Part shown: one piece after another, positions 1-24,037 of the stretch
Numbering within the stretch: the stretch's first letter is position 1
How the letters are laid out: each line of letters begins with the position of its first letter
NCBI GenBank assembly: GCA_002269645.1
Contig: NIVC01001235.1
Coordinates: forward strand, 1-27,905
Direction: 5' to 3'
DNA: 27,905 nucleotides
Source of the DNA: Macrostomum lignano
Taxonomy: Eukaryota
Notes under the pieces: model-generated
What the model saw: only the letters and a program-made list of their open reading frames with translations
The model's database searches: none
Told to the model about the DNA's origin: nothing
Translations under genes and position numbers: made by a program

Positions 1-333
1 ATCCTAAATAGATCAAGTCAAGTCAAGTAGATCAATGGCAATTGCAACTAGTTCTTTGGTCATTGTTATCAGAGACTTTCTTATGCTATGGGCTATCAGA
101 AAGGCTTTTTTTCCATCTAAAACTTGTGGTACCAATGCAAGTGTATATAAACAAGACATAAGAATGCTCAAGTCTTTAATGCTACCATAAACTTCATACA
201 AGGTTTAAGTGCTATAAACCTTTGCAGCTGGGTTTTTTTTTCGCCAGAGATAAGGTGCGAAATCGCACCTTGTGCCAAATTTCAAGGTGCGATTTTAAGG
301 CTCAGAGTGCAATTTCTCTTGAGTCTTGTTTAG

Positions 334-2820: not shown

Positions 2821-3268
2821 GCTCACATTTCAGACAACTGGGAATGTATATTTTAATATCTTACATAAGGCTATAGCTATAGGCTATATCGCCTATATGA
2901 CTTAATAGGATTTAAAGAGTTATTTTGTTTCATATTTTAAGGCAGTGCATAAAAAATAGCTTAAGCATGGTTAAGCCTTTAAAGAAAAATGGTTATAAGA
3001 CCGCACCTAAACCGCACCTACTTTTTTAATTTCAGGGTGCGATTTTAAAATTTAGGGTGCATACGCACACTCTGCGCACAAAAAAAAACCCTGCTTTGCA
3101 GATTATATAATTTTTACAAATGATTAAATTTCAAAACTTTTATAGAGTATCTATTACATGCATGTATTATAACAAAAATGCATTAATTAAATATCATGCC
3201 ATCTAATTTGATGTAACAATAAATAGTCCAAGTTCTATTTAGTGTACAAAGTCAATAATAAATATATA

Positions 3269-3560
3269 CATGCCCAACACCCATTTGACCTGTCCAAAAT
3301 GGACAAGGTAAGTTGCAAAGTCAAAAATGTGAAAAACAAAAATTGGGAGAAGAAAGAAAGGAGAGGAAGAGAAAAGGAAAAGAAAAGAGGGAGAAGAGAG
3401 AGAAGAAAAAGAGGAGAGAGAAAGAGAAGAGAAGAAAAGAGAAAAAGGCAAGAAAAGTAATATACAAAATGAAAATTAAGTTGCAATCTGGAGAAACTAA
3501 GTTGCAAATCTGGACAAAACTAAGTTGCACCAGATAGGTGAAATTTTGAGGTTGGGCATG
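3269..3560. mobile_element. Putative Tc1/mariner-type MITE
   Basis: 10-bp TIR CATGCCCAAC...GTTGGGCATG flanked by TA on both sides. Internal repeated TAAGTTGCA motifs near both ends. GA-rich core at about 3345-3457. Confidence 0.5.
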
Positions 3561-4097
3561 TATGAATAAAAAGTTTCAAGCTTTTTAATTGAAAGTCAAT
3601 ATAACAATTATTTTATTTCTAAGGTAATAAATATTAAATACCTATGTACAAGCATGGAAAGAACAAGTATATTAAAAAATCAAGCTTAGATGCTTAGTTT
3701 AAAAGTTAGAATAATGGATAAAAATACATGTATTTATCATCTAAGAAGCATGGATTGGACTGGGATATTTTAATTATAAAAGAACTGTTTAAATATTTAT
3801 TTTGTTATCATTCTAGTACATGGCCAATGGTAGCTGGTATGATACAAGGGCCATTTGTTGGGATAATAATCATTTGCATATAACTTTTTACTGCCACATT
3901 GAAATTGCTCAAATTAGAAATCAACTTTAAGAGCAATATCCAATGCTACTGTTGAGTGTTGAATAGCTTCTCTATGTCATTCTATTGCTGATTTATGGCT
4001 CATTAAGTGACGAGGTCTAAGAAGTTGCAATTTCGACCTGATCTCTCGACTCTTTCATGCTCTCATCACCTGGACTTGGTACACTCTTGCCCGCGCA

Positions 4098-7000
4098 ATG
4101 TCCAAGAGAAACCCAACATCGGAATTGAATCACGAAAACTGGGATCAGGAGGACGAGAAGGAAGATGTGAGTTGGCTAATTGGGACAGATCTGCTCAGCG
4201 GTGAACGCATTCGATTCTCGCGCCACCACCCTTGGTTTGATTCCATGCGCGACCGAATTCATTGGGGCTTGTGCACGGAGATTGGCCGGGGTTGCCACCC
4301 ATGAGGGCCTAAACCTCTCTCCACTCTCCCTCTCTGCCCCTATCCACTCTGCCTCTGCCTCTCTCCACTCTCCCTCTCTGCCCCTAACCACTCTGCCTCT
4401 GCCTCTCTCCACTCTCCCTCTCTGCCCCTATCCACTCTGCCTCTGCCTCTCTCCACTCTCCCTCTCTGCCCCTAACCACTCCCTCTCCCTCTCTGCCCCT
4501 ATCCACTCCCTCTGCCTCTCCCCACTCTCCCTCTCTGCCCCTATCCACTCCCTCTCCCTCTCTGCCCCTATCCACTCCCTCTGCCTCTCTCCACTCTCCC
4601 TCTGCCCCTATCCACTCCCTCTGCCTTTCTGCCCCTATCCACTCCCTCTGCCTTTCTGCCCCTATCCACTCCCTCTCCCTCTCTGCCCCTTTTCACTCCC
4701 TCTGCCTCTCCCTCTCTGCCCCTATCCACTCCCTCCCTGCCTCTCCACTCTCCCTCTCTCCCTCTGCCTCTCCCTCCCCGCCTCTCTCCACTCTCCCTCT
4801 CTGCCTCTCTCCAACCACCCTCCACTCTCCCTCAAGCTCCTGCGAATATGCTTATGATAATTATCATTATTAATAAGATTTACAATTCTTGTGTCTATCT
4901 AAGAAAACATATTCCAACTGTTTCCAACTAATTCTCACTAACCTAGGCTGGCCGTTTCAAGACTGCGTCGCAGGATGTGCTGAAGGGTCGCGAAATTCGA
5001 GTTGCTAAGCGGCGAGCTCACGATAGTGAGGTGAGAGCTGTGTGACTCAATTATTTTGTCTGTTCTTTTCTACATTATTTATGGTAAGGAATTGTGAAGT
5101 TTGGGTATTGTAAAGGTTAAGAATTATGAAGGTTGGGGATTGTGAAAGTTCGGGATTGTGAAGGTTGGGGATTGTGAAGATTGGGGATTGTGAAGGTTGG
5201 GAATTGTGAAAGTTCGGGATTGTGAAGATCGGGATTTGTGAAGATTGGGACTGTGAAGATCGGGACTGTGAAGATTGGGGATTGTGAAGATCAGGATTGT
5301 GAAGATTGGGGACTGTGAAGCTTGGGGATTGTGAAGATTGGGACTGTGAAGATCGGGACTGTGAAGATTGGGGATTGTGAAGATCGGGATTGTGAAGATT
5401 GGGGACTGTGAAGCTTGGGGATTGTGAAGATTGGGACTGTGAAGATCGGGACTGTGAAGATTGGGGATTGTGAAGATCAGGATTGTGAAGATTGGGGACT
5501 GTGAAGCTTGGGGATTGTAAAGATTGGGACTGTGAAGATCGGGACTGTGAAGATTGGGGATTGTGAAGATCGGGATTGTGAAGATTGGGACTGTGAAGAT
5601 CGGGACTGTGAAGATTGGGGATTGTGAAGATCGGGATTGTGAAGATTGGGACTGTGAAGCTTGGGGATTGTAAAGATTGGGACTGTGAAGATCGGGACTG
5701 TGAAGATTGGGGACTGTGAAGCTTAGGGATTGTGAAGATTGGGACTGTGAAGATTGGGGATTGTGAAGATCGGGATTGTGAAGATTGGGACTGTGAAGAT
5801 TGGAGATTGTGAAGATCGGGACTGTGAAGGCTGAGATTGTGAAGCTTGGAGATTGTGAAGATCGGGACTGTGAAGACTGGGATTGTGAAGCTTGGGGACT
5901 GTGAAGATTGGGGACTGTGAAGCTTGGGACTGTGAAGATTGGGACTGTGAAGATTAGGATTGTGAAGATCAGGACTGTGAAGGCTGGGATTGGAATAGTT
6001 GGATATTAGTTTTAAGCTCATGAGAGCGAGAAACGGCTTGAAATTCAAATGCACAGGGAATGTGCAGTTAATATGGTGAGTCTGAACGGCCCATGTTGCG
6101 GACAAACCATGCTCACAGTTATACAGCAAAACTCTTCTCCGACCCGGCAGGGCAAAGGCACTGGCGGGCTCTTCAAGTCGTTCACCGGCTTCACCGGCTT
6201 CGGTGCCCAGGCCGCGTCGGCCACGACAGCCCCCTCTTTGGCTTTTAACTTCTCGGCCAACGCCACCGCCGCCACCACCACCGATTCGCTGGCGGCCTCG
6301 TCGACGACAACAACGGCGAAATCGGCAACGCCCGCCGCCGATCCGAATGCCGCCCACCTGGCCCAGCTGAAGGCGCTGAACCAGTCCGTGCTGCGCTGGA
6401 TTCAGAGTCACGTGGCTGACAGCCCCTACTGCGTGCTCACGCCCGTGTTCCGCGACTACGAGCGCCACCTGGCCGACATCGAGCGCCGGCACCCGTACGT
6501 GGAGTCGTCGGCAACTGCAAATTCGTCGACTGGAACGGCGGCGGCTGCGGCGGTGACTCCGACGACGACTTCAACAACGCTGGCAGCGCCTTTGAAGGCG
6601 TCGACAAGTCCGGCAAAGTTCAACTTCTCCGCCGCGACTACGTCCACCGCGGCATCGGCACCGACGACCGCTGCCACCACGGCCACCACGATGACGCCCG
6701 CGATGCCTGCCACGTTTAGCTTCAACTCGCAGCAGCCGCAGAAGCCGGTGACTGACGGTGCGGCCACAACGGCAACATTCTTTTTTGGCGCGTCAGCCAA
6801 GTCAACGACGGCTTCGTCGACTTCAACAACGACAACGACGGCGACGTTGGCAACGTCAACGACTGGCTTGACGACAGCGTCGAGTGGGTTCACAGGATTC
6901 AAATTCAACTCAGGGCCGGGGGCGGCGCTGCCGCAACAGCCACCTGGTGGCCTGTCCCTGTTCGGGCTGGGCGGTTTCGCCGCCGCCTCCGCCGCGGCTG

Positions 7001-7440
7001 CCTCGAGCTCCCAGGAGGAGCAGGAAGACGAAGAATACGAGCCGCCGAAGCCGGAGACGCGGGAGATTCGCGAGGACGGCGCCGTGTTCAGCCAGAAGTG
7101 CAAGCTGTTCTACATGGCCGCCGGCGAGGCCAAGCAGTGGAAGGAGAAGGGCGTCGGCTGCGTGCACGTCAAGCCGGCGGAGGCGGAGGGCGGCAGCCGG
7201 GCGCAGTTGATCGTGCGGGCGGACAACACCCTGGGCACCATCATGCTCAACACTCTGGTTACTAAGGACATGAAGCTGTCGGTTGCTAAGAACAATCTCA
7301 GTTTGGCTTGTCCGCCGAATCCGCCAATGCCGAAGTCGGCCAATGACGACCGGCGCATTGTGCCGTTCCTGGTCCGGCTGAAGACCGAGGCCGACGCCAA
7401 GGAGCTGCTGGCCAAGATTGACGGGCTGAGGGAGGCCTGA
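4098..7440 (+). CDS. NUP50: Nucleoporin NUP50 (3 coding exons, 480 aa)
   Basis: Exons 4098-4166 (MSKRNPTSELNHENWDQEDEKED), 4947-5030 (AGRFKTASQDVLKGREIRVAKRR..) and 6151-7440, all phase-0 GT-AG. The N-terminus matches the NUP50 importin-alpha-binding motif (human MAKRNAEKELTDRNWDQEDE..AIKKAKRR). Ser/Thr/Ala-rich FG region and C-terminal Ran-binding domain (FSQKCKLFY..WKEKGVGCVHVK..QLIVRADNTLGTIMLN). Confidence 0.93.
4313..4831. repeat. Pyrimidine-rich minisatellite in NUP50 intron 1
   Basis: Repeated CTCTGCCCCTATCCACTCC / CTCTCCACTCTCC blocks; explains the spurious ORFs at 4176-4857. Confidence 0.9.
5092..5992. repeat. 15-16-bp minisatellite (TGTGAAGATTGGGAC variants) in NUP50 intron 2, with a 93-bp higher-order unit
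   Basis: Tandem TGTGAAG..GGGA(C/T) units. A six-unit 93-bp block recurs about three times at about 5237-5515. Confidence 0.95.
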
Positions 7441-8254
7441 GCCGGACTGCTCAAATATATGCACTATAGGATATGCTAACCCGATAGAAACGCATGGTGA
7501 TTTTGTGGCGCTTAGCTCCTTAACCCTGATGACGCAATCGATTTAGTCGTTTAGCTATCCTGGGGGTCTCTTGCCCCCTCCCCCCACTGCGCTGCCTGAT
7601 TGAGTTAAATTGGTTGCAACCAAGGACTACTTAACAACAAGTCTCAGAAAGTTGGCTTGATACATTTGGTTTTACTTACGTTTTAGAAGTACAGTGAGTA
7701 CTTCTACTGAAAATGCCCAGCAAATGTTCCACTTTGGTAGCCGAAAAATTCATTACGTTTAGTTCGATTCTCTGCATGAATTCATAATCTGCTTATGAAT
7801 TACTTATAATTACTTCCTTAGCAACGGAAATTTTCTATTGTTATTCATGAGTATTAACTGTTGCTATGGGCTTGGCTTAATGATTCGAAACTTTATACAT
7901 TGAAAGTTGTTCGCCAATTTCAAGCTGTTTATTATTATGATAGGAAATTCGATAGAAAATGATGATAATCCAGCCAGTTCTTTGGTCCAGCATTTCCTTT
8001 GTTCGCAATATCCGGTTCGCTGTCTGTTTTGATAACATATTGCTTTTTTAATTCGAACATGTGTACCTGATACTCTCTTGCGTTTGTTGCCATTTAGTTA
8101 TGAATTTGACAATTTGTGTTAGTCTTGTCATCCAATATTGACCCTTCAACACCATTTCTGTCTCGCATTCGTGTCAAACTTCGCTCTTATGTTCAATTAT
8201 TATAACTACAGCTCGACATGTATGCCGCTTGGAAATGGAAGTTAAAGTTAATCA

Positions 8255-8260
8255 AATAAA
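8255..8260 (+). promoter_or_regulatory. Candidate polyadenylation signal of NUP50
   Basis: AATAAA followed by a T-rich tract about 820 nt after the stop codon. Not verified by transcript data. Confidence 0.35.
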
Positions 8261-8412
8261 AGTTTTTTTCTCGACAAAATTTTGAACACGGGGTTGTCTT
8301 GCAATTCACACCCATCAGGGCGGATCCTCACGACACAGAGAGTGTACATGTTTGACGATTAGAAAGCCAGGCAAGCTTTTTTGCCTCAAGGGCCAGATAG
8401 AGAATCTAGCGG

Positions 8413-8625
8413 GCAAGAGGAGGGCGGAGACAGAGGGAATGAAGGAGAAGAGGGATGAAATAGGAGAGAGGAGGGAAGACAAATGATAGGAGAGTAAGGA
8501 GAAGAGAGGAGACGAAAAGAGAAGAGAAGAGGGAAGAAATAGGAGAGAGGAGGGAAGACAAAGGATAGGAGAGTAAGGAGAGAAAATAGAAGAGATTAGA
8601 GAGAAGAGCTGAGAAGAGACAAACC
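8413..8625. repeat. Purine-rich (GA) low-complexity tract with an internal direct repeat
   Basis: AATAGGAGAGAGGAGGGAAGACAAA.GATAGGAGAGTAAGGAGA occurs twice. Confidence 0.8.
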
Positions 8626-8786
8626 TTGAGCAGGCCAGATTGCTATTGTGAAGTTTGAAAGGACCAGAGGATGAATCTTTTAGGCTGTAAGTGTTTTAGC
8701 TTCTGTCTCATTGCCATAGGATATTTCTGCTGTTGAAATGAAAGTATAAATGAAATATCCATAAATTTCATTGGCTGCCTGCCAAG

Positions 8787-11700
8787 GCAACTGAGGCCTG
8801 CGGCGGCAACCCGACGGAGTTCGCCGACCTGCTCAGCTCGGCGCGTCTGCTCAGGGCCATACGCGACGAGCTCGGCTATGCGCGCCCCGGCGCTATTCAG
8901 GCGCGCTGCATCTCTCTGGCGCTGTCTGGCGCCGATCTGCTATGCCAGGCGCCGTCCGGCAGCGGCAAGTCAACCGCCTGCGCTGTGGCCGTCACCCAGC
9001 GATTGCTGACGCTGATTGATGAAGCCAAAAGGCTCAGCCCAGCCTCCGCTGATTTGGAGGGGAATTCTGTCGCCACTCGCGCTCTGGTGCTCTGTCACAG
9101 TCGGGAGCTGGCTGTGCAGACTGTCCGACAGCTGCGCTGCCTCTCCTCTCGCTGTCCGGGACGTCGGCCGCGAGTTGCCGAATTCCTCGGTGGCGCTCCG
9201 GGCAGGTAGCTGGCTGATTGAGTTATTTGGGCTTCTTGAGTGAGATGCTACGGATGTCTTCAGATTGTTTATTGGCGCTTTAGAAGGCTGTATAAGATAG
9301 CTGAATGCTTAAAAGTGTACCGCGATGCTGCAAAACTCGACTGGATGCCTTAAAACTCTGCTGAATGCTTGGAAACTCATCTCAATGCTTGGAAACTCAG
9401 CTGGATGCTTGGAAACTCATCATGATGCTTGGGAACTCAACTGGATGCTTGGAAACTCATCCGATGCTTCGAAACTCAACTGGATGCTTGGAAACTCAGC
9501 TGGATGCTTGGAAACTCATCTCAATGCTTGGGAACTCATCTTAATGCTTGGAAACTCATCTTAATGCTTGGAAACTCATCTTAATGCTTGGGAACTCAAC
9601 TGGATGCTTGGAAACTCATCTCAATGCTTGGAAACTCATCTTAATGCTTGGAAACTTATCTCAATGCTTGGAAACTCAGCTGGATGCTTGAGAAACTCAT
9701 CTCAATGCTTGGAAACTCATCTCAATGCTTGGAACTCATCTCAATGCTTGGAACTCATCTCAATGCTTGGAACTCATCTCAATGCTTGGGAACTCAGCTG
9801 GATGCTTGGAACTCATCTCAATGCTTGGGAACTCAGCTGGATGCTTGGAACTCATCTCAATGCTTGGGAACTCATTTTAATGCTTGGAAACTTATCCCAA
9901 TGCTTGGAAACTCAGCTGGATGCTTGAGAAACTCATCTCAATGCTTGGAAACTCAGCTGGATGCTTGAGAAACTCATCTCAATGCTTGGAAACTCATCTC
10001 AATGCTTGGAACTCATCTCAATGCTTGGAACTCATCTCAATGCTTGGGAACTCAGCTGGATGCTTGGAACTCATCTCAATGCTTGGGAACTCAGCTGGAT
10101 GCTTGGAACTCATCTCAATGCTTGGGAACTCATTTTAATGCTTGGAAACTTATCCCAATGCTTGGAAACTCAGCTGGATGCTTGAGAAACTCATCTCAAT
10201 GCTTGGAAACTCATCTCAATGCTTGGAAACTCATCTCAATGCTTGGAAACTCATCTCAATGCTTGGAAACTCATCTCAATGCTTGGAAACTCATCTCAAT
10301 GCTTGGAAACTCATCTCAATGCTTGGAAACTCATCTTAATGCTTGGAAACTCATTTTAATGCTTGGAAACTCATCTCAATGCTTGGAAACTCATCTTAAT
10401 GCTTGGAAAACCATTTTAATGCTTGGAAACTCAGCTGGATGCTTGAGAAACTCATCTCAATGCTTGGGAACTCAACTGGATGCTTGGAAACTCATCCGAT
10501 GCTTCGAAACTCAACTGGATGCTTGGAAACTCAGCTGGATGCTTGGAAACTCATCTCAATGCTTGGGAACTCATCTTAATGCTTGGAAACTCATCTTAAT
10601 GCTTGAAAACTCATCTCAATGCTTGGAAACTCATCTCAATGCTTGGAAACTCATTTTAATGCTTGGAAACTCATCTCAATGCTTGGAAACTCATCTTAAT
10701 GCTTGGAAACTCATCTCAATGCTTGGAAACTCAGCTGGATGCTTGAGAAACTCATCTTAATGCTTGGAAACTCAGCTGGATGCTTGAGAAACTCATCTTA
10801 ATGCTTGGAAACTCAGCTGGATGCTTGAGAAACTCATTTCAAAGCTTGGAAACTCATCTCAATGCTTGGAACTTAGCTGGATGCTTGGAACTCATCTCAA
10901 TGCTTGGGAACTTAGCTGGATGCTTGGAACTTAGCTGGATGCTTGGAACTCATCTCAATGCTTCGAACTCATCTCAATGCTTCGAACTCATCTCAATGCT
11001 TGGGAACTCAGCTGGATGCTTGGAACTCATCTCAATGCTTGGGAACTTAGCTGGATGCTTGGAACTCATCTCAATGCTTGGAACTCATCTCAATGCTTGG
11101 GAACTCATCTCAATGCTTGGGAACTTAGCTGGATGCTTGGAACTCATCTCAATGCTTGGGAACTTAGCTGGATGCTTGGAACTCATCTCAATGCTTGGAA
11201 CTCATCTCAATGCTTGGGAACTTAGCTGGATGCTTGGAACTCATCTCAATGCTTCGAACTCATCTCAATGCTTGGGAACTCAGCTGGATGCTTGGAACTC
11301 ATCTCAATGCTTGGGAACTCAGCTGGATGCTTGGAACTCATCTCAATGCTTCGAACTCATCTCATTGCTTGGGAACTCAGCTGGATGCTTGGAACTCATC
11401 TCAATGCTTGGGAACTCAGCTGGATGCTTGGAACTCATCTCAATTCTGGGAAACTCTGTGTTTTGCTGTGTCAAAAGGTACCTGAAGGCTCGGAAAGGTA
11501 CTTGATATGCAAAGTATGCAGGCTTGGTTTACGCATCTCAGACATGCAATTGAGACGATGCACTCCCATCGCTTTTTTCATCAAGACGAGACGCTGCCGC
11601 TGCTGCCTCCCGGCCGGACATCGCAGTCGGCTCGCCTGGCCGCCTGCTGGACTTGGCACGCCGGGGTCACCTGCGCACCGACCAGCTGCGAATTGTTATG

Positions 11701-13945
11701 CTGGACGACTGCGACCAGCTGCTGCTGCGCGATGAGGCGGTGCAGGCGCTGCTGCTGGCACCACCCGATCGGCAGGTTCTCATGTGCTGCACCACCATCA
11801 GTGCGGCTGTGAGTGCCGGGCCTGACAGACAGACTGACTGACTGACTGACTGACTGACTGACTGACTGACTGACTGACTGACTGACTGACTGACTGACTG
11901 ACTGACTGACTGACTGACTGACTGACTGACTGACTGACTGACTGACTGACTGACTGACTGACTGACTGACTGACTGACTGACTGACTGACTGACTGACTG
12001 ACTGACTGACTGACTGACTGACTGACTGACTGACTGACTGACTGACTGACTGACTGACTGACTGACTGACTGACTGACTGACTGACTGACTGACTGACTG
12101 ACTGACTGACTGACTGACTGACTGACTGACTGACTGACTGACTGACTGACTGACTGACTGACTGACTGACTGACTGACTGACTGACTGACTGACTGACTG
12201 ACTGACAGACACAGACAGACACAAACACACAGTAAGCCACACAGGCAGGTAATACTTATATTTCCTAAACCTCACAGATGCGGCAGCAGTGCCTGGAGCT
12301 GATGCAGAATCCGCATGAGCTGTGCCTGAGCGATGAGGCTCAGCTGGCTCCGCACAGCCTCCTGCAGTATCGCGTGCCGATTGCAGACTGCGGCTACAGA
12401 GCTAAGAATGCTCGGCTGCTGAAGCTGTTGCGAGTTCTCGAGTTTGAACAGGTGCACCTGGCTTTAGTGATAATCTGGGGAGTTGGCATTCTGCCTACTT
12501 CTAATCGTGGTGACTCATTTCATTGAGCCACTGCAAACCTCCGCAGGCAATCGTATTTGTCAATTCCCCGCGCCAGTGCGACAATCTGGAGAAATTCCTG
12601 AAATCTCGCGGCCTGTCAGCGCTGGCGGCGCACGGGGACCTGTGCCAGGCCAGCCGGATGGAGAACTACCGGCTGTTCAGGAATTGCAAGCGGCGCATTC
12701 TAATCAGCACGGATTTGTACGCCTTTGGTCTGCAGTTTCAACGGGTCGGCGTAGTTATTAACTACTGTCTGCCTGCGGACCCGGGTCTCTACCTGTACAG
12801 GGTGAGCAGTTAGAGAATTTTGAAAGTCAGCTAGTCTGTCACATTCTTAGAATAGCCATTAATAGATTATTCCAGCACTTCATTCAAAGCATATTTAGAA
12901 TCACACTTTAACCAGCTTTAGACTCGCCCTTGAATCATTCTTAGAATCGCTCTTAAACCATTTTTAGAATCGCTCTTAAACTGTTTCTTAGAATCTCCCT
13001 TAAACCTTCTTAGAATCTCCGTAAAACCTTTTTTAGAATCGCCCTCAAACCCTTTCTTAGAATCTCCCTGAAACCCTTTCTTAGAATTGCCCTCAAACCC
13101 TTTCTTGGAATTGTCATTAAACCCTTTCCTAGAATCGCCCTCAAAACATTCTTAGAATCGCCCTCAAACTCTTTCCTAGAATCACCATTAAACCCTTTCT
13201 TAGACTCACCCTCCAACATTTTCCTAGAATCGCCCTCAAACCCTTTCTTAGAATCTCCCTGAAACCCTTTCTTAGAATTGCCCTCAAACCCTTTCTTGGA
13301 ATTGTCATTAAACCCTTTCCTAGAATCGCCCTCAAACCCTTTCTTAGAATCACCATTAAACCCTTTCTTAGACTCGCCCTCAAACCCTTTCTTTGAATCG
13401 CCTTTAAAACCCTTTCTTAGAATCGCCCTTAAATTGTTTTTAAATCGCCTTTAGATAATTCTTAGGATCGCACGTAAAAAAATCTTAGAATCGTCATTAA
13501 ATAATTCTCAGCACTTCATTCAAGGCATTTTTAGAATCGCTCTAAAACTGTTTCTAGAATCGACCATTAACCATATTCTTAGAATCGACCTTAAAAAATT
13601 ATAGACTCGCCCTTAAACGAGCTTTGAGAATCAGATGCTCACAAACACCAATAGCTTTCTCAACTTTTTTATTCACAGATCGGCCGTGCTGCACACTTCG
13701 GAAGCCGCGGACTCGCCCTGACGCTGCAGGAGCCGGACTCGGAGGCGCATGTGTTGAATGAGGCGGAGTCCAGATTCTGTATGCAAATAGCGCACCTGCC
13801 CGCCACAGTTCACGTATGCGACTATTTGCCGCCTGCTGCGGGTGGAGACGCCCAGCCACGCACTGGAGTGATTTTCTTTGCTGTGGAGCCGAATCGGGCT
13901 GCTGATGAAGCTGTGGTTGATGACGAATATCAGGATGCTGAATAG
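8787..13945 (+). CDS. DDX39: Divergent UAP56/DDX39-family DExD-box helicase (5 exons, 445 aa, no genomic ATG found)
   Basis: Exons 8787-9205, 11586-11808, 12278-12451, 12547-12801 and 13679-13945 splice in frame (GT-AG; phases 2,0,0,0). UAP56-specific signatures: DLLCQAPSGSGKS, LVLCHSRELA, GSPGR, ELMQNPHELCLSDEAQLAPHSLLQY, KNARLLKLLRVLEFEQ, HVLNEAESRFCMQIAHLP. Catalytic motifs II, III, V and VI are altered. The 5' end is uncertain, and the symbol denotes family rather than proven orthology. Confidence 0.85.
9325..11450. repeat. ~2.1-kb 19-21-bp minisatellite (ATGCTTGGAAACTCATCTCA / ATGCTTGGAAACTCAGCTGG) in helicase intron
   Basis: About 100 head-to-tail units of two alternating types, with duplicated multi-unit blocks and no unique spacers. 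Confidence 0.95.
11832..12203. repeat. (GACT)93 microsatellite in helicase intron
   Basis: Uninterrupted GACT run flanked by GACA units. Confidence 0.97.
12890..13615. repeat. ~24-bp minisatellite (TTAGAATCGCCCTCAAACCCTTTC) in the last helicase intron
   Basis: Degenerate tandem units, best conserved at 13010-13420. Confidence 0.9.
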
Positions 13946-13961
13946 ACTGACCGCTTACCGC

Positions 13962-14441
13962 GATCTCAAAGAATGAGCACTCAGATCTCAAAGAATGAGC
14001 ACTGAGATCTCAAAAGATTGAGCACCCAGATCTCAAGGATGAGCACCAAGATCTCAAAGGATGAGCACCCAGATCTCAAAGAATGAGCACTCAGATCTCA
14101 AAGGATGAGCACCCAAATCTCAAGGAATGAGCACCCAGATCTCAAGGAATGAGCACTCAGATCTCAAAGAATGAGCACTCAGATCTCAAGGATGAGCAGC
14201 AAGATCTCAAAGGATGAGCACCCAGATCTCAAAGAATGAGCACTCAGATCTCAAAGGATGAGCACCCAAATCTCAAGGAATGAGCACTCAGATCTCAAAG
14301 AATGAGCACTCAGATCTCAAGGAATGAGCACCCAGATCTCAAGGAATGGCACCCATATCTCAAAGGATGAGCACCCAGATCTCAAGGAATGAGCACCCAG
14401 ATCTCAAGGAATAAGCACCCAGATCTCAAAGAATGAGCACC
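13962..14441. repeat. 21-22-bp minisatellite (AGATCTCAAAGAATGAGCACTC) directly after the helicase stop
   Basis: About 22 tandem units. Confidence 0.95.
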
Positions 14442-14779
14442 TAGGTCTTAACGGATCAGTACCCGACTTTCTTTGCTAAGCTTCTGCAATATCAGTCTCA
14501 ATTCGCCTTATTGCATGCTTACCATATTCACTGTAGTGACTCTCTGATGCATAAAAAACGGCTGTGATAATTCAATTTTTACACACTTATCTTCTATTGT
14601 AGTTCTATCTTCTTTTTACAATCCATAGTTGTTGACTACTTGAGTAACTTTATATGCATATATATCTGATACATAAATAATGGATTTTATGATCTGAAAT
14701 GCAACTTTGTTTACTTTGCTTTTTGGTGTTTTTGGCTTCAATCAAAATAGCTAAATAAGTCAGCTAGAAACAAATTAGA

Positions 14780-15710
14780 TTGCAGCTAGGTGCTAAATAG
14801 TTGGCAGATAGATGCTAATTAGTTGGCAGATAGATGCTAAATTAGGTGGCAGATAGATGCTAATTAGTTGGCAGATAGATGCTAAATTAGGTGACAGCTG
14901 GATGCTAATTGGTTGGCAGATAGATGCTAATTAGGTGACAGCTGGATTCTAATTAGGTGGCAGATAGATGCTAATTAGGTGACAGCTGGATGCTAATTAG
15001 GTGGCAGATAGATGCTAATTAGGTCGCAGCTGGATGCTATTTAGGTGGCAGATAGATGCTAATTAGGTGACAGCTGGATGCTAATTAGCTGGCAGATAGA
15101 TGCTAATTAGGTGGCAGATAGATGCTAATTAGGTGGCAGATAGATGCTAATTAGGTGGCAGATACATGTAGATGCTAATTAGGTGGCAGCTGAATGCTTA
15201 TTAGGTGGCAGCTGGATGCTAATTAGGTGGCAGCTGGATGCTAATTAGGTGGCAGCTAGATGCTAATTAGGTGGCAGATACATGTAGATGCTAATTAGGT
15301 GGCAGCTGAATGCTAATTAGGTGGCAGCTGGATGCTAATTAGGTGGCAGATACATGTAGATGCTAATTAGGTGGCAGCTGAATGCTAATTAGGTGGCAGC
15401 TGAATGCTAATTAGGTGGCAGCTGGATGCTAATTAGGTGGCAGATACATGTAGATGCTAATTAGGTGGCAGCTGAATGCTAATTAGGTGGCAGCTGGATG
15501 CTAATTAGGTGGCAGCTGAATGCTAATTAGGTGGCAGATACATGTAGATGCTAATTAGGTGGCAGCTGAATGCTAATTAGGTGGCAGCTGGATGCTAATT
15601 AGGTGGCAGCTGGATGCTAATTAGGTGGCAGATAGATGCTAATTAGGTCGCAGCTGGATGCTATTTAGGTGGCAGCTGGATGCTAATTAGGTGGCAGCTA
15701 GATGCTAATT
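14780..15710. repeat. 22-bp minisatellite (GATGCTAATTAGGTGGCAGCTG/ATA) upstream of AMDHD2
   Basis: About 40 tandem units ending about 20 nt before the AMDHD2 acceptor. Confidence 0.95.
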
Positions 15711-15729
15711 ACCACCTGAAGTGTTCCAG

Positions 15730-17941
<2,212 letters not shown>

Positions 17942-18300: not shown

Positions 18301-19124
18301 CCGCTTTTTTATTTGACCTTAAGAATCAGACCTGATCTACATGTATTCATTCCACAGTGCAACTGCAGCATTAGTACTCGTATATTGCGATTCAGCAAGT
18401 GCTAATCAGACTTGCTTAGAATAATCTTTCATTTGCGGAATTTCAGAGCTTCATGTTCGCGAAATAGAGAATTTTTGTGCCTTAAATTTGTTTAGCTATC
18501 AATCACTGAGTTGTCATTATTTCTGTAAGTACATTCGTATTCATTTTCATTAACTCTTTCAGATCAGTAAAAGAGTAAGTATTAATAGACACTATTCATA
18601 ATTCTAGAAATTGTTTTCAGATTTAGATGCAAAATGCTTCTGACTGGGAGATATTAGCAAGCTTATTTGAGTCTTTATACCTTGAGCGGAATATTAAATA
18701 CACCGTCATTTCTTTGTAACTCCCAGCGAGTTGCCCAGTTTTGACCATAGAGCATGTGCAGACCAGCAGTTCTTGTCCTTTATTCCTGATTCTAAAACCG
18801 TGATTCACTTCTCGGTCTTATTGGCACTCAAAATGATTGCATTGTGCGATTTGCGTGTGAGGTTGAGTTGTGCCTTGAGTCCGTGCCACTAAACTCTGCC
18901 GCTGACAGAGCGTTCTGGGCTGCCACCAATGTAAGAGCTGCGAATTTACGGTAACTCCTAAAGGTCAGAGGTTAAAGTGCACAGAGAGCACGTGATCAAA
19001 CAGGTGGAATACGATAGCAAATACAAGCTCAAAGGCGCAACTCAACCTGACATGAGAACCTCACAGCACTACTCGTGAGTAGGCACTCAAGCTTATGCAT
19101 AAACCGTCCCCGCAGCCGGCAGCC

Positions 19125-21824
19125 ATGCCCGACCCCGTCGCCGCCGACCAGCAGAGCGCCCTTTCCAGCTGGCTGAACTCCGTGGCCCCGGAGCGAATCT
19201 TCTGCGGTGTCCTTGGCTTCTTCTGGCTCACCTACCTGTGGGAGAACTACCTGGCCTGGCGGCAGTACAAACTCATGCGCGACTCGCCTCAGCTGCCCGA
19301 GGCCGCCCGGCAGCTTACGGACGACCAGACCTACGCCAAGGCCCGGGCCTACAGCATCGACAAGAGCCGGTACAGTGCTGTCCGCGGCCTCTGGTCGCAG
19401 CTCCTGTTCACCTTCATCCTGCTAGCCGAGCTCATGCCCCGCCTGTGGGCCGTGGCCGGCCGCCATCTGGACAGCCTGGCCGGGCCTGATGCCAGCCGCG
19501 GCCAGCTGCCGCAGTCGATGGTGTTCCTGGTGTACGTCATGCTGCTGTCCTTCCTAATCGACCTGCCCTGGTCGGTGTACAAGAACTTCGTGCTGGAGGC
19601 CAGGCACGGCTTCAACAAGCAGACACCGGGTTTCTACGCCAAGGACCAGCTTAAGAGCCTGCTGCTGAGCATGGCCATCGGCCTGCCGATCGCCGCCGCC
19701 CTGCTCTGGCTGATCGAGCGTGGCGGGCCGTACTTCTACGTGTACGCCTGGCTTCTGGCCTCCGTTGTGATTTTCGTTCTCATGCTGGTGTACCCCAGCT
19801 TCATTGCGCCCCTGTTTGACACGTACGAGCCGCTGCGCGAGGGCCAGCTGAAGCAGCGCATTGAAGATCTGGCTAAGCGGCTGGAGTTCCCGCTGACCCA
19901 GCTGCTGGTGAGACGGTTGGGCGAATGCGGTTAACTGAGAACACTCAATTGCATGGAGTGGGGTTAGAGCTCGGGTGTGGGTGACAGGCGGGTGCGAGGC
20001 TTGGGTGGATGACATTGGCTTGAGGTAGGTGAGAGTAGCTTGGGGTGGGTGACAGTGGCTTGTGATGGGTGACAGCGGCTTGGGGTTGGTGACAGCGGCT
20101 TGGAGTGGGTGAGAGTGCCTTGGGGTGGGTGAGAGTAGCTTGGGGAGTGTGAGAGTGGCTTGGGTGGGTAAGAGTAGGTTGGGGTGGGTAAGAGTAGGTT
20201 GGGGAGGGTAAGAGTAGGTTGGGGTGGGTAAGAGTAGGTTGGGGAGGGTAAGAGTAGGTTGGGGTGGGTAAGAGTAGGTTGGGGTGGGTAAGAGTAGGTT
20301 GGGGTGGGTAAGAGTAGGTTGGGGTGGGTAAGAGTAGGTTGGGGTGGGTAAGAGTAGGTTGGGGTGGGTGAGAGTAGGTTGGGTGGGTAAGAGTAGGGTG
20401 GGGTGGGTGAGAGTGAATGAGAGCCGCCGGCTGGGTGAGAGGCCGTCAGCCGGCGAGGAGTTCACTCAGAATCGCCGGCACCTCCCCGCAGGTGATCGAG
20501 GGTTCGCGCCGCTCGGCCCATAGCAACGCCTACTTATTCGGGCTGTGGCGCAGCAAGCGCATTGTGCTGTTCGACACCCTAATCGAAGGCTACCAGATGC
20601 AGTCGGTGAAGGAAAAGGAGGAGAAGGAGCGGGAAAAACGGGAGAAGGAGAAGGCCGCCGAAGGCCAGGGTGAGAAAAGCGACGAGGCGAAAGCGGAACC
20701 GGATTCTGCAGCCGGCGAGGAAAAGGAAAAGGAGGCCAAGAAGGGCTGCAACGATGATGAGATTCTGGCCGTGCTGGGTCACGAGCTGGGCCACTGGTCT
20801 CTGGGCCACAACGTGTCCAACATTTTCATCAGCGAGGTCAACCTGTTCCTCATGTTCTTCGCCTTCGGCCAGCTCCTTAACTGCCACTCTGCGTTCGCCG
20901 CCTTCGGCTTCCAGCAGCCGGCGCCGCTGCTGCTCCGGCTGGCCTTCGTGCTGGAGTTCCTGCTGTCGCCATACAATGAGCTGCTCGGCTTCGCCATGAT
21001 CTGCCTCACCCGCCTGTTCGAGTTCCAGGTGCGCTCGCCGCTGCTCAACCTCTTGCTCTCTATCCCCCATCCTCCCTCTCCCTCTCCCTCTCCTCCCTCT
21101 CCCTCTTCTCCCTCTCCCTCTCCTCCCTCTCCCTCTCCCTCTCCTCCCTCTCCCTCTTCTCCCTCTCTAGTCTCCCTCTCCCTCTTCTCCCTCTCCCTCT
21201 TCTCCCTCTCCCTCTTCTCCCTCTCCCCCTCCCTCTTCTCCCTCTCCAGTCTCCCTCTCCCTCTTCTCCCTCTCCCTCTTCTCCCTATCCCTCTTCTCCC
21301 TCTCCCCCTCCCTCTTCTCCCTCTCCAGTCTCCCTCTCCCTCTTCTCCCTCTCCCTCTTCTCCCTCTCCCTCTTCTCCCTCTCCCCTCTCCCTCTTCTCC
21401 CTCTCCAGTCTCCCTCTCCCTCTTCTCCCTCTCCCTCTTCTCCCTCTCCCCCTCCCTCTTCTCCCTCTCCAGTCTCCCTCTCCCTCTTCTCCCTCTCCCC
21501 CTCCCTTTTCTCCCTGTCTCTCTCCTCCCTCTCACCACTGTACCTCTTCTTCATCTCCTCAGCTTTTACTACTAGCAGTAGCCATTCATATAATTGCTTA
21601 TAAAATTTCATTCTTTTTTTCAAACTTAGGCCGACCGATTCTCAGTGAGGCTGGGCTTTGGCCAGCAGCTGAAGACGGCGCTAATTAAACTGCACACGGA
21701 CAACCTGTCCTACCCGCTGTTTGACCCGCTGTACAGCGCTTTCAATCACTCGCACCCCACTGTGCTGCACCGGCTGGCCGCTATTGATCAGGCCGAGGCC
21801 GAGGACGAGGCCAAGACTAAATAG
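19125..21824 (+). CDS. ZMPSTE24: CAAX prenyl protease 1 (Ste24/FACE-1 zinc metalloprotease), 3 exons, 504 aa
   Basis: Exons 19125-19907, 20492-21028 and 21630-21824, all phase-0 GT-AG. Motifs: WENYLAWRQ, KARAYSIDKSRY, FVLEARHGFNKQT, PSFIAPLFDTYEPL, EGSRRSAHSNAY, KRIVLFDTL, GHELGHW (HExxH), EFQAD and HSHP..HRL. ATG 19125 has the better context (GCAGCCATGC); an in-frame ATG at 19095 is an alternative. Confidence 0.95.
20020..20415. repeat. 20-bp G-rich minisatellite (GGGGTGGGTAAGAGTAGGTT) in ZMPSTE24 intron 1
   Basis: About 12 near-perfect units at 20160-20410 plus degenerate units upstream. Confidence 0.93.
21065..21535. repeat. Polypyrimidine (CCCTCT/CTTCT) tract in ZMPSTE24 intron 2
   Basis: Almost purely C/T on the + strand; source of the Glu/Arg/Gly and Ser/Pro/Leu pseudo-ORFs. 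Confidence 0.93.
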
Positions 21825-21959
21825 GGGGAGTCTCAGTGCCGTTTCTTGGATTTCATTCCGTAGGGAGGCCGTCTGTAGCCATACTTTATATAGATTCTTT
21901 AACTGCCCTCTGCCGACACTTATAGGTGTGCCTGAAACTGCTTAGCACAGGGATGGAGA

Positions 21960-22205
21960 TTGGATGAAATCAGAGAGTGAAATAGATGAGTGGAAGTGAG
22001 ATTAGAGAGTGGGATAGATAAGAGATGAGATTAGAGAGAGTTAGATAAGAGGAGATGAGATTAGAGGGCGAGATAGATAATAGGCGAGATATGAGACTGT
22101 GATAGATAAGAGAAGGTGAGATTAGAGGGTGAGATAGATAATAGGCGAGAGATTAGAAACTGGGATAGATAAGAGTAGGTAAGATTAGAGAAAGAGATAG
22201 ATAGT
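21960..22205. repeat. Degenerate ~27-bp GAGATTAGAG..GATAGATAA repeats in the ZMPSTE24 3' region
   Basis: Several imperfect units; the homologous array is at about 25040-25310. Confidence 0.75.
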
Positions 22206-22666
22206 GATTGTGTAATCAGAGTGTTTGCTGGGATTAAAGAGTTCGATGAGACATAAAATATGAGATTAGCGAAACTAGATAAGTGAAAAGAGAAGTGAGA
22301 TCACTTTTTAGACACTTCGTATATGTTGATAAGAAAATGGATTCAGCACAGCTCTATTTATATGATTGATATCAAAATATGTTCATTTCTGTCATGTATC
22401 CGCTGTCCTTTGTTAGCTCGATAATTGCTAAATTTGCTCCGAGTTTTTCGGATGTATTTTTCATAGCCTGCTGTATGATTTTTCAAATATTTATTCTGAG
22501 TTAGGCAAGCAGTGAGGGCCAGGGACCGGAGCCCAGTGCATCCAAGCATTAATTTTGTTTAATTTCATTCGATAATACTTGATTACAGCGCTACTTCTAG
22601 TAGTGAATTAAAAACACAAAGTCTGCTTTATTAAGCTTTTATTTTATTTTCTGTCTTTAAGGCTAA

Positions 22667-22672
22667 AATAAA
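22667..22672 (+). promoter_or_regulatory. Candidate polyadenylation signal of ZMPSTE24
   Basis: AATAAA about 840 nt after the stop; a second AATAAA lies near 22855. Not verified. Confidence 0.3.
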
Positions 22673-22980
22673 TCAAATAATATTTGTAGCTGTCAACCCC
22701 GTGCGCTGCGATTCGCTCAAGTTCTTTGCAGTCTGCTAAAGGCAAAACAATATATACTTTACAGTTGTGTACTCCTGCGGCTGCGTGCCAAACTTTGGTT
22801 TGTCAGTCTGACATCATCTGGCTTGAACTAGTGTAGCTCTGATCAATATAATTCAATAAATTTATGCGGCCAAAGCTTCCGCTTCATTTGGTTAAGGGCG
22901 AGTTGGCCTGTGGGGCAAAAAATCGTGCTATTTTCATTCTGGCTTCATTTTTTGATGAATAAAATGTCCATCAGAAATGG

Positions 22981-23490: not shown

Positions 23491-23559
23491 CCCGGTGTAA
23501 AATGGTTAGCATGGTTGTGACACTCGAGGACACTCGCTCTGTTACACCCTTCCAAAAAT

Positions 23560-23941: not shown

Positions 23942-24037
23942 CAGAGGTTAAAGTACACAGAGAGCACGTGACCAAACAGGTGGAATACGATAGCAAATAC
24001 AAGCTCGAAGGCGCAACTCAACCTGATATGAGAACCT

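What the first reader, a model, noticed from the sequence alone, without database searches (positions are those of the whole stretch)
8787..13945. UAP56/DDX39 paralog with an intact frame but rewritten catalytic motifs: candidate pseudo-helicase
Seen: five exons splice to an uninterrupted 445-aa UAP56-like protein. The Q motif and Walker A (GSGKS) are retained. Motif II is DDCD (11704-11715) instead of DECD, motif III is CTT (11788-11796) instead of SAT, motif V is STDLYAFGLQ instead of ATNLFGRGMD, and motif VI is YRIGRAAH instead of HRVARAGR. Established: the motif II Glu activates water for ATP hydrolysis, motif III couples hydrolysis to RNA remodelling, and motif VI arginines contact the ATP phosphates. 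UAP56 acts in TREX mRNA export and in Drosophila piRNA-precursor export. Inference: a protein that may bind ATP or RNA but hydrolyse poorly, acting as a clamp, scaffold or decoy (possibly germline or piRNA related). Several coordinated changes without any frame disruption argue against simple decay.
Basis: partly seen in the sequence, partly recalled or inferred. Interest (0 to 1): 0.78.

Follow-up and report, generated by a model that had tools for sequence, protein, structure and literature searches.

The report
Divergent flatworm UAP56 paralog, altered catalytic motifs
This is a real, transcribed, five-exon gene of the flatworm Macrostomum lignano: a fast-evolving extra copy of the mRNA-export helicase UAP56/DDX39 that keeps the helicase fold but has replaced several residues needed to hydrolyse ATP, so it is probably a poor or dead ATPase; that is of moderate interest and has not been tested.

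Summary
Exons 8787-9205, 11586-11808, 12278-12451, 12547-12801 and 13679-13945 (+ strand, all GT-AG) splice to 445 codons without a stop. The motif coordinates are exact. The best matches are UAP56/DDX39B (E 1e-73; predicted structure TM 0.93).

The window is Macrostomum lignano. The same locus is annotated from RNA-seq in assembly Mlig_3_7 (BOX15_Mlig026976g1), truncated there by homopolymer indels.

Of 36 positions nearly invariant in 148 DEAD-box representatives, 26 are kept: the Q motif, the P-loop Lys, the RNA-binding motifs, and two of the three motif VI Arg. Ten are changed: E181D, R332F, D335Q, H356Y, R363H, S208C, A209T and three Thr-to-Ser.

Random substitution to the same divergence never left the frame open (0 of 300 runs), so long-term decay is unlikely. 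The canonical Mlig-ddx39 exists elsewhere and is essential. There is no genomic ATG. The annotated transcript starts exactly at the 8787 acceptor, and the M. lignano spliced leader ends in ATG, so the leader probably supplies the start codon.

No ortholog was found outside M. lignano. No expression pattern, dN/dS or enzymology could be obtained. The pseudo-helicase reading is plausible but unproven. The piRNA/germline idea has no support here.

The parts
8767..8786 (+). 3' splice acceptor (…ctgccaag|G) at the start of the first coding exon; proposed spliced-leader trans-splice site
   Evidence: The NCBI model PAA70478.1 (P0048, flagged 'partial') starts with ATEACGG, which is exactly window 8787. 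That annotation is RNA-seq based and cuts transcripts at trans-splice sites. There are in-frame stops upstream, no in-frame ATG, and no in-frame cis exon. The site is AAG, not the commonest [T/C]TNCAG motif.
8787..9205 (+). Exon 1: Q motif (PGAIQ 8886-8900), Walker A APSGSGKS (8949-8972), motif Ia HSRELA (9096-9113), and a lineage-specific insertion of about 17 residues after the P-loop helix
9206..11585 (+). Intron 1 (2380 nt), almost wholly a 20-nt minisatellite (9333-11456, about 107 copies)
11586..11808 (+). Exon 2: motif Ic SPGR (11632-11643), motif II DDCD (11704-11715), motif III CTT (11788-11796)
   Evidence: The exon 1-2 and exon 2-3 junctions are the same as in the RNA-seq-based model P0048.
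11809..12277 (+). Intron 2 (469 nt) holding a near-perfect (CTGA)97 microsatellite (11822-12210)
12278..12451 (+). Exon 3: linker and start of the second RecA-like domain
12547..12801 (+). Exon 4: motif IV IVFV (12550-12561), the QxxR motif (motif IVa), motif V/Va STDLYAFGLQ (12706-12735), and the first two codons of motif VI (YR, 12796-12801)
12802..13678 (+). Intron 4 (877 nt) with a 24-nt minisatellite (12918-13617); it splits motif VI
13679..13945 (+). Exon 5: rest of motif VI (IGRAAH, 13679-13696), end of the helicase core (about residue 407), a 38-residue tail predicted disordered with an acidic end, and the TAG stop
   Evidence: The homopolymer length near 13896 differs between assemblies.
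6049..7440 (+). Upstream same-strand neighbour: last large exon of a NUP50-like FG/Ran-binding nucleoporin. Its only AATAAA is at 8255, about 530 nt before the 8787 acceptor, so the two genes may form an operon.
   Evidence: (Pfam NUP50 on the upstream gene in L001). Operon distance criterion.

Best explanation
A Macrostomum-lineage, fast-evolving duplicate of the mRNA-export DEAD-box ATPase UAP56/DDX39. It is transcribed and spliced from five exons. It most likely gets its AUG from the trans-spliced leader, because the gene has no start codon of its own.

The protein keeps the two-RecA-domain fold. It keeps the adenine-reading Q motif, the P-loop Lys, the Mg-binding Asp and the RNA-backbone contacts. 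It has replaced:
- the two residues that position the attacking water (motif II Glu to Asp; motif VI His to Tyr);
- the last arginine finger (Arg to His);
- the Arg and Asp of motif Va that lock the second domain onto ATP;
- the Ser-Ala of motif III that couples hydrolysis to RNA work.

The most likely result is a protein that can still bind nucleotide, and perhaps RNA or UAP56 partners, but turns ATP over poorly or not at all. It would act as a binder, scaffold or competitor, while the canonical Mlig-ddx39 does the enzymatic job.

Shown: gene structure, family, substitutions, fold prediction, an RNA-based gene model, and existence of the canonical copy. Inferred: loss of ATPase activity, the leader-donated AUG, and any cellular role.
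For: - Intact 445-codon frame with canonical splice sites.
- Closest to UAP56/Sub2 by sequence, by distance tree and by predicted structure: pLDDT 85, pTM 0.84, top hit 8enk UAP56 at TM 0.93 and rmsd 2.0.
- 26 of 36 near-invariant DEAD-box positions are kept. The 10 changed ones cluster in the ATP-hydrolysis and coupling motifs. F at 332, Q at 335 and Y at 356 occur in none of the 147-148 representatives aligned at those positions.
- Unconstrained substitution to 40% identity gave a mean of 8.6 stops and never none (0 of 300 runs). The frame was therefore kept by selection over most of the divergence.
- The RNA-seq-derived Mlig_3_7 model BOX15_Mlig026976g1 uses the same exon 1-2 and 2-3 junctions and starts at 8787.
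- The M. lignano SL ends in ATG, and flatworm SL AUGs can start translation (Cheng et al. 2006, as cited in PMC12582326).
- A second M. lignano copy (P0047) differs by only 3 of about 290 comparable residues. The neighbouring NUP50-like gene differs by 5 of about 330. P0047 carries the same CTT and YRIGRAAH.
- The canonical Mlig-ddx39 is essential.
Against: - No biochemical data exist. Asp at the Glu position keeps a carboxylate, and two of the three motif VI arginines remain, so residual ATPase activity is possible.
- No ortholog was found in any other species, so there is no dN/dS.
- The motif changes could be recent and followed by loss of function.
- The 8787 acceptor is AAG, not the commonest trans-splice motif, and no SL-bearing read was examined here.
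- The gene did not turn up in the neoblast, germline or positional expression tables that could be searched. Several of those files are truncated in the library.
- R363 and the motif Va residues also support ATP-dependent RNA binding, so an RNA-clamp role is not assured.
Confidence: 0.5

Rival explanations
1. It is still a working, if slow, DEAD-box ATPase. The substitutions are tolerated variants in a fast-evolving, lineage-specific helicase: Asp as the general base, His in place of one Arg, Ser for Thr.
For: The Q motif, G-x-G-K-S, D180, D183, T210, R357, R360 and all RNA-contact motifs are kept. The fold is predicted with confidence in the closed, ATP/RNA-type arrangement. Three of the ten changes are conservative Thr-to-Ser. 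UAP56 itself already departs from DEAD (it has DECD).
Against: Five residues are changed together: E181D, R332F, D335Q, H356Y and R363H. Each is the same residue in 143-144 of 147-148 representatives. F332, Q335 and Y356 are seen in none of them. From established mutagenesis of eIF4A and Vasa (my own knowledge, not tested here), single changes at these positions strongly reduce ATPase activity.
Confidence: 0.17
2. It is a transcribed but functionless duplicate on its way to becoming a pseudogene. The catalytic changes mark loss of constraint, the start codon has been lost, and the frame is intact only because inactivation is recent.
For: There is no genomic ATG. No ortholog was found outside M. 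lignano. Database models of the locus are frameshifted. GC3 is 0.70, lower than in the neighbouring genes at 0.78-0.88. No expression class was found.
Against: About 60% amino-acid divergence from every UAP56 with zero stops and zero frameshifts is not reached under neutrality (0 of 300 runs). The substitutions are not spread evenly: 26 of 36 near-invariant positions are kept, including the RNA-binding and structural ones. The frameshifts in the other assemblies are all single-base homopolymer length differences. They disagree with one another, as expected of long-read consensus errors. The leader AUG explains the missing ATG. Two copies are both maintained.
Confidence: 0.2
3. Assembly or gene-model artefact: the motif changes or the open frame come from consensus errors or from wrongly joined exons.
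For: Assemblies of this genome differ at homopolymers in this gene. One database model (P0001) uses another donor at 11775 that would skip motif III.
Against: All motif codons are identical in the independent Mlig_3_7 record. The changes are substitutions, not indels. The junctions agree with the RNA-seq-based model. Homology to UAP56 runs unbroken through all five exons.
Confidence: 0.02

Closest known systems
UAP56 / DDX39B / DDX39A / Sub2 (TREX mRNA-export DEAD-box ATPase), including the canonical M. lignano gene Mlig-ddx39 (Mlig030213.g1)
   Same: It is the best sequence match (E 1e-73, about 36-39% identity) and the best structural match (TM 0.93). The length of the helicase core is the same. 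UAP56-type signatures are kept: Cys in motif II (D-x-C-D), the 'LCH(T/S)RELA' form of motif Ia, LEF(N/E)Q before motif IV, and FG(T/S)(K/R)GLA after motif VI.
   Different: It is not the ortholog, because the canonical copy lies elsewhere and is essential. It sits on a very long branch. It has E181D, S208C/A209T, R332F, D335Q, H356Y and R363H. It lacks the acidic N-terminal extension of about 45 residues. It has an insertion of about 17 residues after the P-loop helix and a new 38-residue tail that is predicted disordered and ends in an acidic stretch.
DEAD-box-derived pseudohelicases: Utp25/Def (SSU processome) and C. elegans MUT-15
   Same: They are DEAD-box folds kept under selection after loss of catalytic residues, and they serve as scaffolds or RNA-binding platforms (PMC9539457; bioRxiv 10.64898/2026.09.04.749402).
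   Different: Those proteins are far more degenerate: the Q motif is absent and DEAD is replaced by NNAE in MUT-15, and the motifs are only vestigial in Utp25. Their inactivity was tested experimentally. Here the Q motif, the P-loop and most motifs survive, and nothing has been assayed.
eIF4AIII in the exon junction complex (a DEAD-box protein used as an ATP-locked RNA clamp)
   Same: It is a model for how a DEAD-box protein with blocked hydrolysis can act as a stable RNA-bound platform. The predicted model superposes on EJC-bound eIF4AIII (2j0s, TM 0.91).
   Different: eIF4AIII has intact catalytic motifs and is inhibited in trans by MAGOH-Y14 (established knowledge). Here the block would be built into the protein. 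Loss of R363 and of the motif Va residues may also weaken the closed RNA-binding state.
Other degenerate UAP56-like paralogs seen here (Podila/Mortierella KAG0356246.1; spider Oedothorax gibbosus KAG8195245.1; two of unknown origin)
   Same: They are UAP56-length proteins that also depart at many near-invariant DEAD-box positions. One (P0112) also has C-T-T at motif III.
   Different: Each is only about 30-34% identical to the M. lignano protein and has lost different motifs. For example, P0060 loses the RNA-binding motifs Ia and Ic but keeps DECD. They look like independent events, not one family.

Membership tests
DEAD-box RNA helicase family (SF2) | Two RecA-like domains (Pfam DEAD + Helicase_C) | tested here: met
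   Pfam E 1.9e-22 and 4.1e-21; AF2 pLDDT 85, pTM 0.84; Foldseek TM 0.90-0.93 to closed DEAD-box structures
DEAD-box RNA helicase family (SF2) | Q motif (upstream aromatic residue, G-x-x-P-x-x-I-Q) | tested here: met
   F12, P34 and Q38 are kept
DEAD-box RNA helicase family (SF2) | Motif I A-x-x-G-x-G-K-T | tested here: met
   APSGSGKS: G58, G60 and K61 are kept. T62S is conservative (S in 2 of 144)
DEAD-box RNA helicase family (SF2) | Motif II D-E-x-D with the catalytic Glu | tested here: not met
   DDCD. Glu occurs in 143 of 147 representatives and Asp in 2
DEAD-box RNA helicase family (SF2) | Motif III S-A-T | tested here: not met
   CTT. S is found in 130 of 145 and A in 140 of 145; only the Thr is kept
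DEAD-box RNA helicase family (SF2) | RNA-contact motifs Ia (PTRELA), Ib (GG), Ic (TPGR), IV, IVa (QxxR) and V (T) | tested here: met
   R106, E107, Q111, G135, G136, P157, G158, R159, F276, Q306, R309 and T327 are all kept. T105S and T156S are conservative
DEAD-box RNA helicase family (SF2) | Motif Va (A-R-G-x-D) | tested here: not met
   AFGLQ. R is found in 144 of 147 and D in 143 of 147; F and Q occur in none
DEAD-box RNA helicase family (SF2) | Motif VI H-R-x-G-R-x-G-R | tested here: not met
   YRIGRAAH. R357, G359 and R360 are kept. H356Y (H in 144 of 148) and R363H (R in 143 of 148) are changed
DEAD-box RNA helicase family (SF2) | RNA-stimulated ATPase and unwinding activity | not testable with these tools
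   Needs recombinant protein
UAP56/DDX39/Sub2 subfamily | Closer to UAP56/Sub2 than to any other DEAD-box subfamily | tested here: met
   PDB phmmer gives 1e-73 for DDX39B and 3e-62 for Sub2, against 1e-45 for eIF4A. It joins the base of the UAP56 clade in a neighbour-joining tree, on a long branch
UAP56/DDX39/Sub2 subfamily | Being the species' ortholog of DDX39 (reciprocal best hit, high identity) | tested here: not met
   The canonical Mlig-ddx39 transcripts score e=0.0 / 716 against human DDX39B. This protein is only about 36-39% identical to any UAP56
UAP56/DDX39/Sub2 subfamily | Binding of THO, ALYREF/Yra1 and SARNP; role in mRNA export | not testable with these tools
   No interaction data; interface residues were not analysed
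Pseudohelicase (pseudoenzyme) | Helicase fold kept | tested here: met
Pseudohelicase (pseudoenzyme) | Catalytic activity lost | not testable with these tools
   Inferred only from five substitutions at catalytic or ATP-contact positions
Pseudohelicase (pseudoenzyme) | Gene maintained by selection and expressed | tested here: inconclusive
   Survival of the open frame is not compatible with neutral divergence, and an RNA-seq-based gene model exists. There is no dN/dS, no ortholog and no protein evidence.
Flatworm SL trans-spliced mRNA using the leader's 3' AUG as start codon | Acceptor at the mRNA 5' end, no genomic in-frame ATG, leader ending in AUG in frame with the ORF | tested here: met
   There is an AG at 8785-8786. 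Stops lie upstream in frame and there is no ATG before residue 178. The SL is ...TTGCATG. The annotated partial CDS starts at 8787.
Flatworm SL trans-spliced mRNA using the leader's 3' AUG as start codon | SL-containing reads mapped at the acceptor | not testable with these tools
   Raw RNA-seq data are not available here. The acceptor is not the commonest [T/C]TNCAG motif.

The most novel reading that the evidence does not exclude
A selected, ATPase-dead UAP56 paralog with no start codon of its own. It would be co-transcribed in an operon with the nuclear-basket nucleoporin NUP50 and made translatable only by the spliced leader's AUG. It would act at the pore or in TREX as a built-in hydrolysis-blocked clamp or competitor that tunes mRNA (or small-RNA precursor) export in flatworm stem or germ cells. 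It would be one instance of a recurrent pattern in which UAP56 duplicates in distant lineages (Mortierellaceae fungi, spiders) become pseudohelicases.
Probability: 0.1. Interest if true: 0.7.

Novelty: new variant of a known kind. Interest (0 to 1): 0.38.

Why it matters
UAP56/DDX39 is an essential ATPase that licenses mRNPs for export, and Mlig-ddx39 is the strongest stem-cell RNAi phenotype in this model flatworm. A natural paralog that keeps the nucleotide and RNA surfaces but has lost the hydrolysis residues would be a ready-made separation-of-function variant. It could show what UAP56 binding does without turnover.

It would also add a UAP56-derived case to the very short list of DEAD-box pseudohelicases (Utp25, MUT-15). 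M. lignano has RNAi and transgenesis, so the idea can be tested directly.

If the protein turns out to be active, or the gene to be decaying, this is simply one more lineage-specific duplicate in a recently polyploid genome.

Tried and rejected
- Searched for a cis-spliced upstream start exon in 7440-8786. The only ATG followed by a strong donor (8672-8687, ATGAATCTTTTAGGCT|GTAAGT) is out of frame with both candidate acceptors (8787 and 8796), so it was rejected.
- Looked for orthologs or second-copy DNA to compute dN/dS. Three word-indexed protein searches and one exhaustive HMMER search found only M. lignano's own models. P0001 is not on any held contig.
- Looked for expression class. 'Mlig026976' is absent from the searchable full texts and from the supplements of PMC5816591 and PMC7336406. 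The eLife 2016 tables list only canonical-cluster DDX39 transcripts. I considered whether RNA1509_10881 (Helicase_C only, e=2e-69) could be this gene. I rejected that because it shares a read cluster with the canonical transcripts.
- The frameshifts in P0001, P0047, P0048 and L001 could be evidence of pseudogene copies. I rejected that as the main reading. They are single-base homopolymer differences that disagree among assemblies, and the window reads through in the homologous frame.
- The Mlig-ddx39 RNAi primers do not match the window, so published ddx39 knock-downs did not target this gene directly.
- The alternative donor at 11775 (used by P0001, which skips motif III in frame) is a weak site and is not the one used by the RNA-based model.

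Full report
**What is in the sequence**

The window is a repeat-rich eukaryotic genome with GC-rich exons. The introns are filled with minisatellites. Joining 8787-9205, 11586-11808, 12278-12451, 12547-12801 and 13679-13945 on the + strand gives 1338 nt. That is 445 codons plus TAG with no internal stop, while the other two frames carry 12 and 16 stops. All four introns are GT...AG with pyrimidine-rich acceptors, and the exons are 57-68% GC against 37-50% in the introns.

- DDCD at 11704-11715
- CTT at 11788-11796
- APSGSGKS at 8949-8972
- STDLYAFGLQ at 12706-12735
- YRIGRAAH at 12796-12801 plus 13679-13696, split by intron 4

**Which family it belongs to**

Pfam finds DEAD and Helicase_C. Among solved structures the best matches are human DDX39B/UAP56 (E 1.5e-73) and DDX39A, then yeast Sub2 (3e-62). 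eIF4A and DDX6 are well behind at about 1e-45.

An AlphaFold2 model built on 42 sequences is confident over residues 6-404 (mean pLDDT 85, pTM 0.84). Residues 405-445 are predicted disordered. The model superposes best on UAP56 in the UAP56-Tho1 complex (8enk, TM 0.93, rmsd 2.0 Å) and on closed RNA/ATP-analogue complexes of Sub2, eIF4A1 and eIF4AIII.

In a simple neighbour-joining tree the protein joins the base of the UAP56/Sub2 clade on a very long branch. UAP56-type signatures survive: Cys in motif II, LCH(S)RELA, LEFEQ and FGSRGLA.

**Which organism, and is the sequence right**

The closest database proteins are all from Macrostomum lignano:
- UniProt A0A1I8GSZ1 (P0001)
- UniProt A0A1I8F2H9 (P0047), a fused NUP50-like plus helicase model
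- NCBI PAA70478.1, 'BOX15_Mlig026976g1, partial' (P0048)

The DNA behind PAA70478.1 is Mlig_3_7 scaffold NIVC01001234.1, held here as L001. It aligns to window 1-13240 at 99.2% identity. Across the five exons it is identical except for four single-base homopolymer deletions, at window positions 11764, 12566, 13840 and 13896. Those deletions explain why the NCBI model stops after 221 residues.

The older UniProt models have other homopolymer indels, and they disagree with each other. The window reads through in the frame that stays homologous to UAP56. I therefore take the window as correct and the frameshifts as long-read consensus errors.

All the variant motif codons are substitutions, and they are the same in L001. 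P0001 independently shows DDCD, STDLYAFGLQ and YRIGRAAH, and P0047 shows CTT and YRIGRAAH. Only the last ~17 residues are uncertain, because all three assemblies differ near 13896.

**How unusual the substitutions are**

I aligned the protein with 148 DEAD-box proteins: 146 of the representatives from the exhaustive search (one per 50%-identity cluster) plus two UAP56-type proteins from the first search. I then scored 36 positions that are nearly invariant.

Twenty-six are kept: Q38, G58, G60, K61, R106, E107, Q111, G135, G136, P157, G158, R159, D180, D183, T210, F276, Q306, R309, T327, G333, Y354, R357, G359, R360, G365 and G368.

Ten are changed:
- T62S, T105S and T156S, which are conservative
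- E181D (Glu in 143 of 147)
- S208C and A209T
- R332F (Arg in 144 of 147; Phe in none)
- D335Q (Asp in 143 of 147; Gln in none)
- H356Y (His in 144 of 148; Tyr in none)
- R363H (Arg in 143 of 148)

Eighty-three of the 148 comparison proteins have no deviation at these positions. Only four have more than ten, the number seen here.

Motif VI keeps its first two arginines and loses only the third, plus the His. The RNA-contact motifs are essentially intact.

From established structural work on Vasa and eIF4AIII (my own knowledge, not tested here):
- The motif II Glu and the motif VI His position the attacking water.
- The second and third motif VI Arg contact the gamma-phosphate.
- The motif Va Arg and Asp tie the second domain to the nucleotide.

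The pattern is therefore what one expects of a protein that can still bind nucleotide but hydrolyses poorly. Because R363 and motif Va also support the closed, RNA-bound state, a stable RNA-clamp role is possible but not assured.

**Is it decaying?**

The protein is only about 36-39% identical to any UAP56. Canonical UAP56 proteins are far more alike.

I applied random substitutions to the coding sequence until identity fell to 40%. This produced a mean of 8.6 stop codons, and no run had fewer than two (0 of 300 runs open, even ignoring indels). The frame must therefore have been kept by selection through most of the divergence. The uneven pattern of retained positions says the same.

A second M. 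lignano copy (P0047) differs at 3 of about 290 comparable residues. The neighbouring NUP50-like gene differs at 5 of about 330. The helicase-like gene is thus not evolving faster than its neighbour between the copies, though these numbers are small.

A recent loss of function cannot be excluded. No ortholog outside M. lignano was found in 5.8 billion or 1.84 billion proteins, and no second-copy DNA was reachable, so dN/dS could not be computed. Other Macrostomum species may simply be missing from those collections.

**Expression and the missing start codon**

There is no in-frame ATG before residue 178, and there are stops upstream in frame. The only nearby ATG followed by a good donor is out of frame.

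The Mlig_3_7 annotation was built from RNA-seq with StringTie and TACO. Transcripts were cut at mapped trans-splice and poly(A) sites (PMC5730564). Its partial CDS begins exactly at window 8787 and uses the same exon 1-2 and 2-3 junctions as the model here. That is indirect evidence that the gene is transcribed and spliced.

The M. lignano spliced leader is CGGTCTCTTACTGCGAAGACTCAATTTATTGCATG (PMC8629364). Flatworm leaders end in AUG, and that AUG can serve as initiator (Cheng et al. 2006, as cited in PMC12582326). Joined at 8787, the leader's ATG is in frame and gives M-ATEACGG....

I therefore propose that the leader supplies the start codon. This is an inference. No SL reads were examined, and the acceptor is AAG rather than the commonest [T/C]TNCAG.

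The upstream same-strand gene is a NUP50-like nucleoporin that ends at 7440. Its only AATAAA is at 8255, about 530 nt before the acceptor. That distance is within the range used to call operons in this species.

**The canonical copy**

Mlig-ddx39 corresponds to RNA1509_632, RNA1509_16673 and Mlig030213.g1, and scores e=0.0 / 716 against human DDX39B. It is trans-spliced and expressed in neoblasts and gonads, and it gave the fastest lethal RNAi phenotype in the published screen (PMC5173321 and PMC5816591). Its RNAi primers do not match this window. The gene studied here is therefore an additional, uncharacterised paralog.

**Comparison with known systems**

DEAD-box pseudohelicases are known but few:
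- Utp25/Def (PMC9539457)
- C. elegans MUT-15, where DEAD is replaced by NNAE, the Q motif is absent and no ATPase activity is measured (bioRxiv 10.64898/2026.09.04.749402)

Both are far more degenerate than this protein. My literature searches found no described UAP56-derived inactive paralog.

In passing, the exhaustive search showed other UAP56-like proteins with many lost invariant residues:
- Mortierellaceae fungi (P0060; a cluster at 90% identity or more that spans Podila and Mortierella)
- a spider (P0094)
- two unidentified eukaryotes (P0080 and P0112; the latter also has C-T-T at motif III)

They share only about 30-34% identity with the flatworm protein and have lost different motifs, so they look like independent events.

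**Verdict**

This is a UAP56-derived paralog under past selection whose hydrolysis and coupling residues are rewritten while its binding motifs are kept, and a canonical copy exists elsewhere.

Loss of activity, any clamp or decoy role, and any germline or piRNA link remain untested. I put about 0.5 on a maintained, ATPase-impaired binder or scaffold. I put about 0.17 on a still-active variant helicase, about 0.2 on a transcribed decaying duplicate, and about 0.02 on an artefact.

It is a modestly interesting and readily testable lead in a tractable model, not a new kind of system.

Noticed in passing
window 8787 (acceptor 8785-8786); L001 10001: The gene has no start codon of its own. The RNA-based NCBI model starts exactly at this acceptor, and the M. 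lignano spliced leader ends in ATG in frame. This is probably a gene that depends on the leader's AUG for translation.
   Followed up: partly
window 6049-7440 (+), AATAAA at 8255: The upstream same-strand neighbour is a NUP50-like FG/Ran-binding nucleoporin. Its single poly(A) signal lies about 530 nt before the helicase acceptor, so the two may form an operon. An older annotation (A0A1I8F2H9) fuses the two genes through a donor at 7371|7372.
   Followed up: partly
window 11764, 12566, 13840, 13896 versus L001 12960, 13771, 14854, 14909: The public Mlig_3_7 scaffold has four 1-nt homopolymer deletions inside this gene's exons. They truncate the NCBI protein to 221 residues. The UniProt models have other indels. 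The database entries for this gene are therefore all broken.
   Followed up: yes
P0060, P0080, P0094, P0112 (proteins): Other UAP56-like proteins with many lost invariant DEAD-box residues occur in Mortierellaceae fungi (Podila, Mortierella), a spider (Oedothorax gibbosus) and two unidentified eukaryotes. Degeneration of UAP56 duplicates may be recurrent.
   Followed up: partly
window 9333-11456, 11822-12210, 12918-13617, 13962-14448, 14773-15711: Introns and flanks are almost filled with tandem arrays: a 20-nt unit (about 107 copies), a near-perfect (CTGA)97, a 24-nt unit, and two 22-nt units downstream of the stop. No AATAAA or ATTAAA lies between the stop (13945) and the next gene (about 15720).
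   Followed up: no
window 21000-24050 and 24050-27150: There is a tandem segmental duplication of about 3.1 kb (93-98% identity, start-to-start spacing 3077-3110). It includes several minisatellite arrays and lies just downstream of, or overlaps, the 3' part of the ZMPSTE24-like gene.
   Followed up: partly
window 357-817 and 1953-2415: There is an inverted repeat with arms of about 460 nt (99% complementary over 399 nt) separated by about 1.1 kb. It looks like a transposon or foldback element.
   Followed up: no
window 15721-17886 (+) and 19095-21070 (+): The downstream same-strand genes are an N-acetylglucosamine-6-phosphate deacetylase (AMDHD2/NagA; E 8e-42 to 7nut), with a (CTGT)n array in an intron, and a ZMPSTE24-type CAAX prenyl protease (Peptidase_M48_N, E 4e-59). 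All four genes in the window are on the + strand.
   Followed up: partly
window 11775 (alternative donor CAG|GTTCTC): An in-frame alternative 5' splice site is used by UniProt model A0A1I8GSZ1. It would remove 11 codons (VLMCCTTISAA), which is exactly motif III. The RNA-based model uses the 11808 donor instead.
   Followed up: partly
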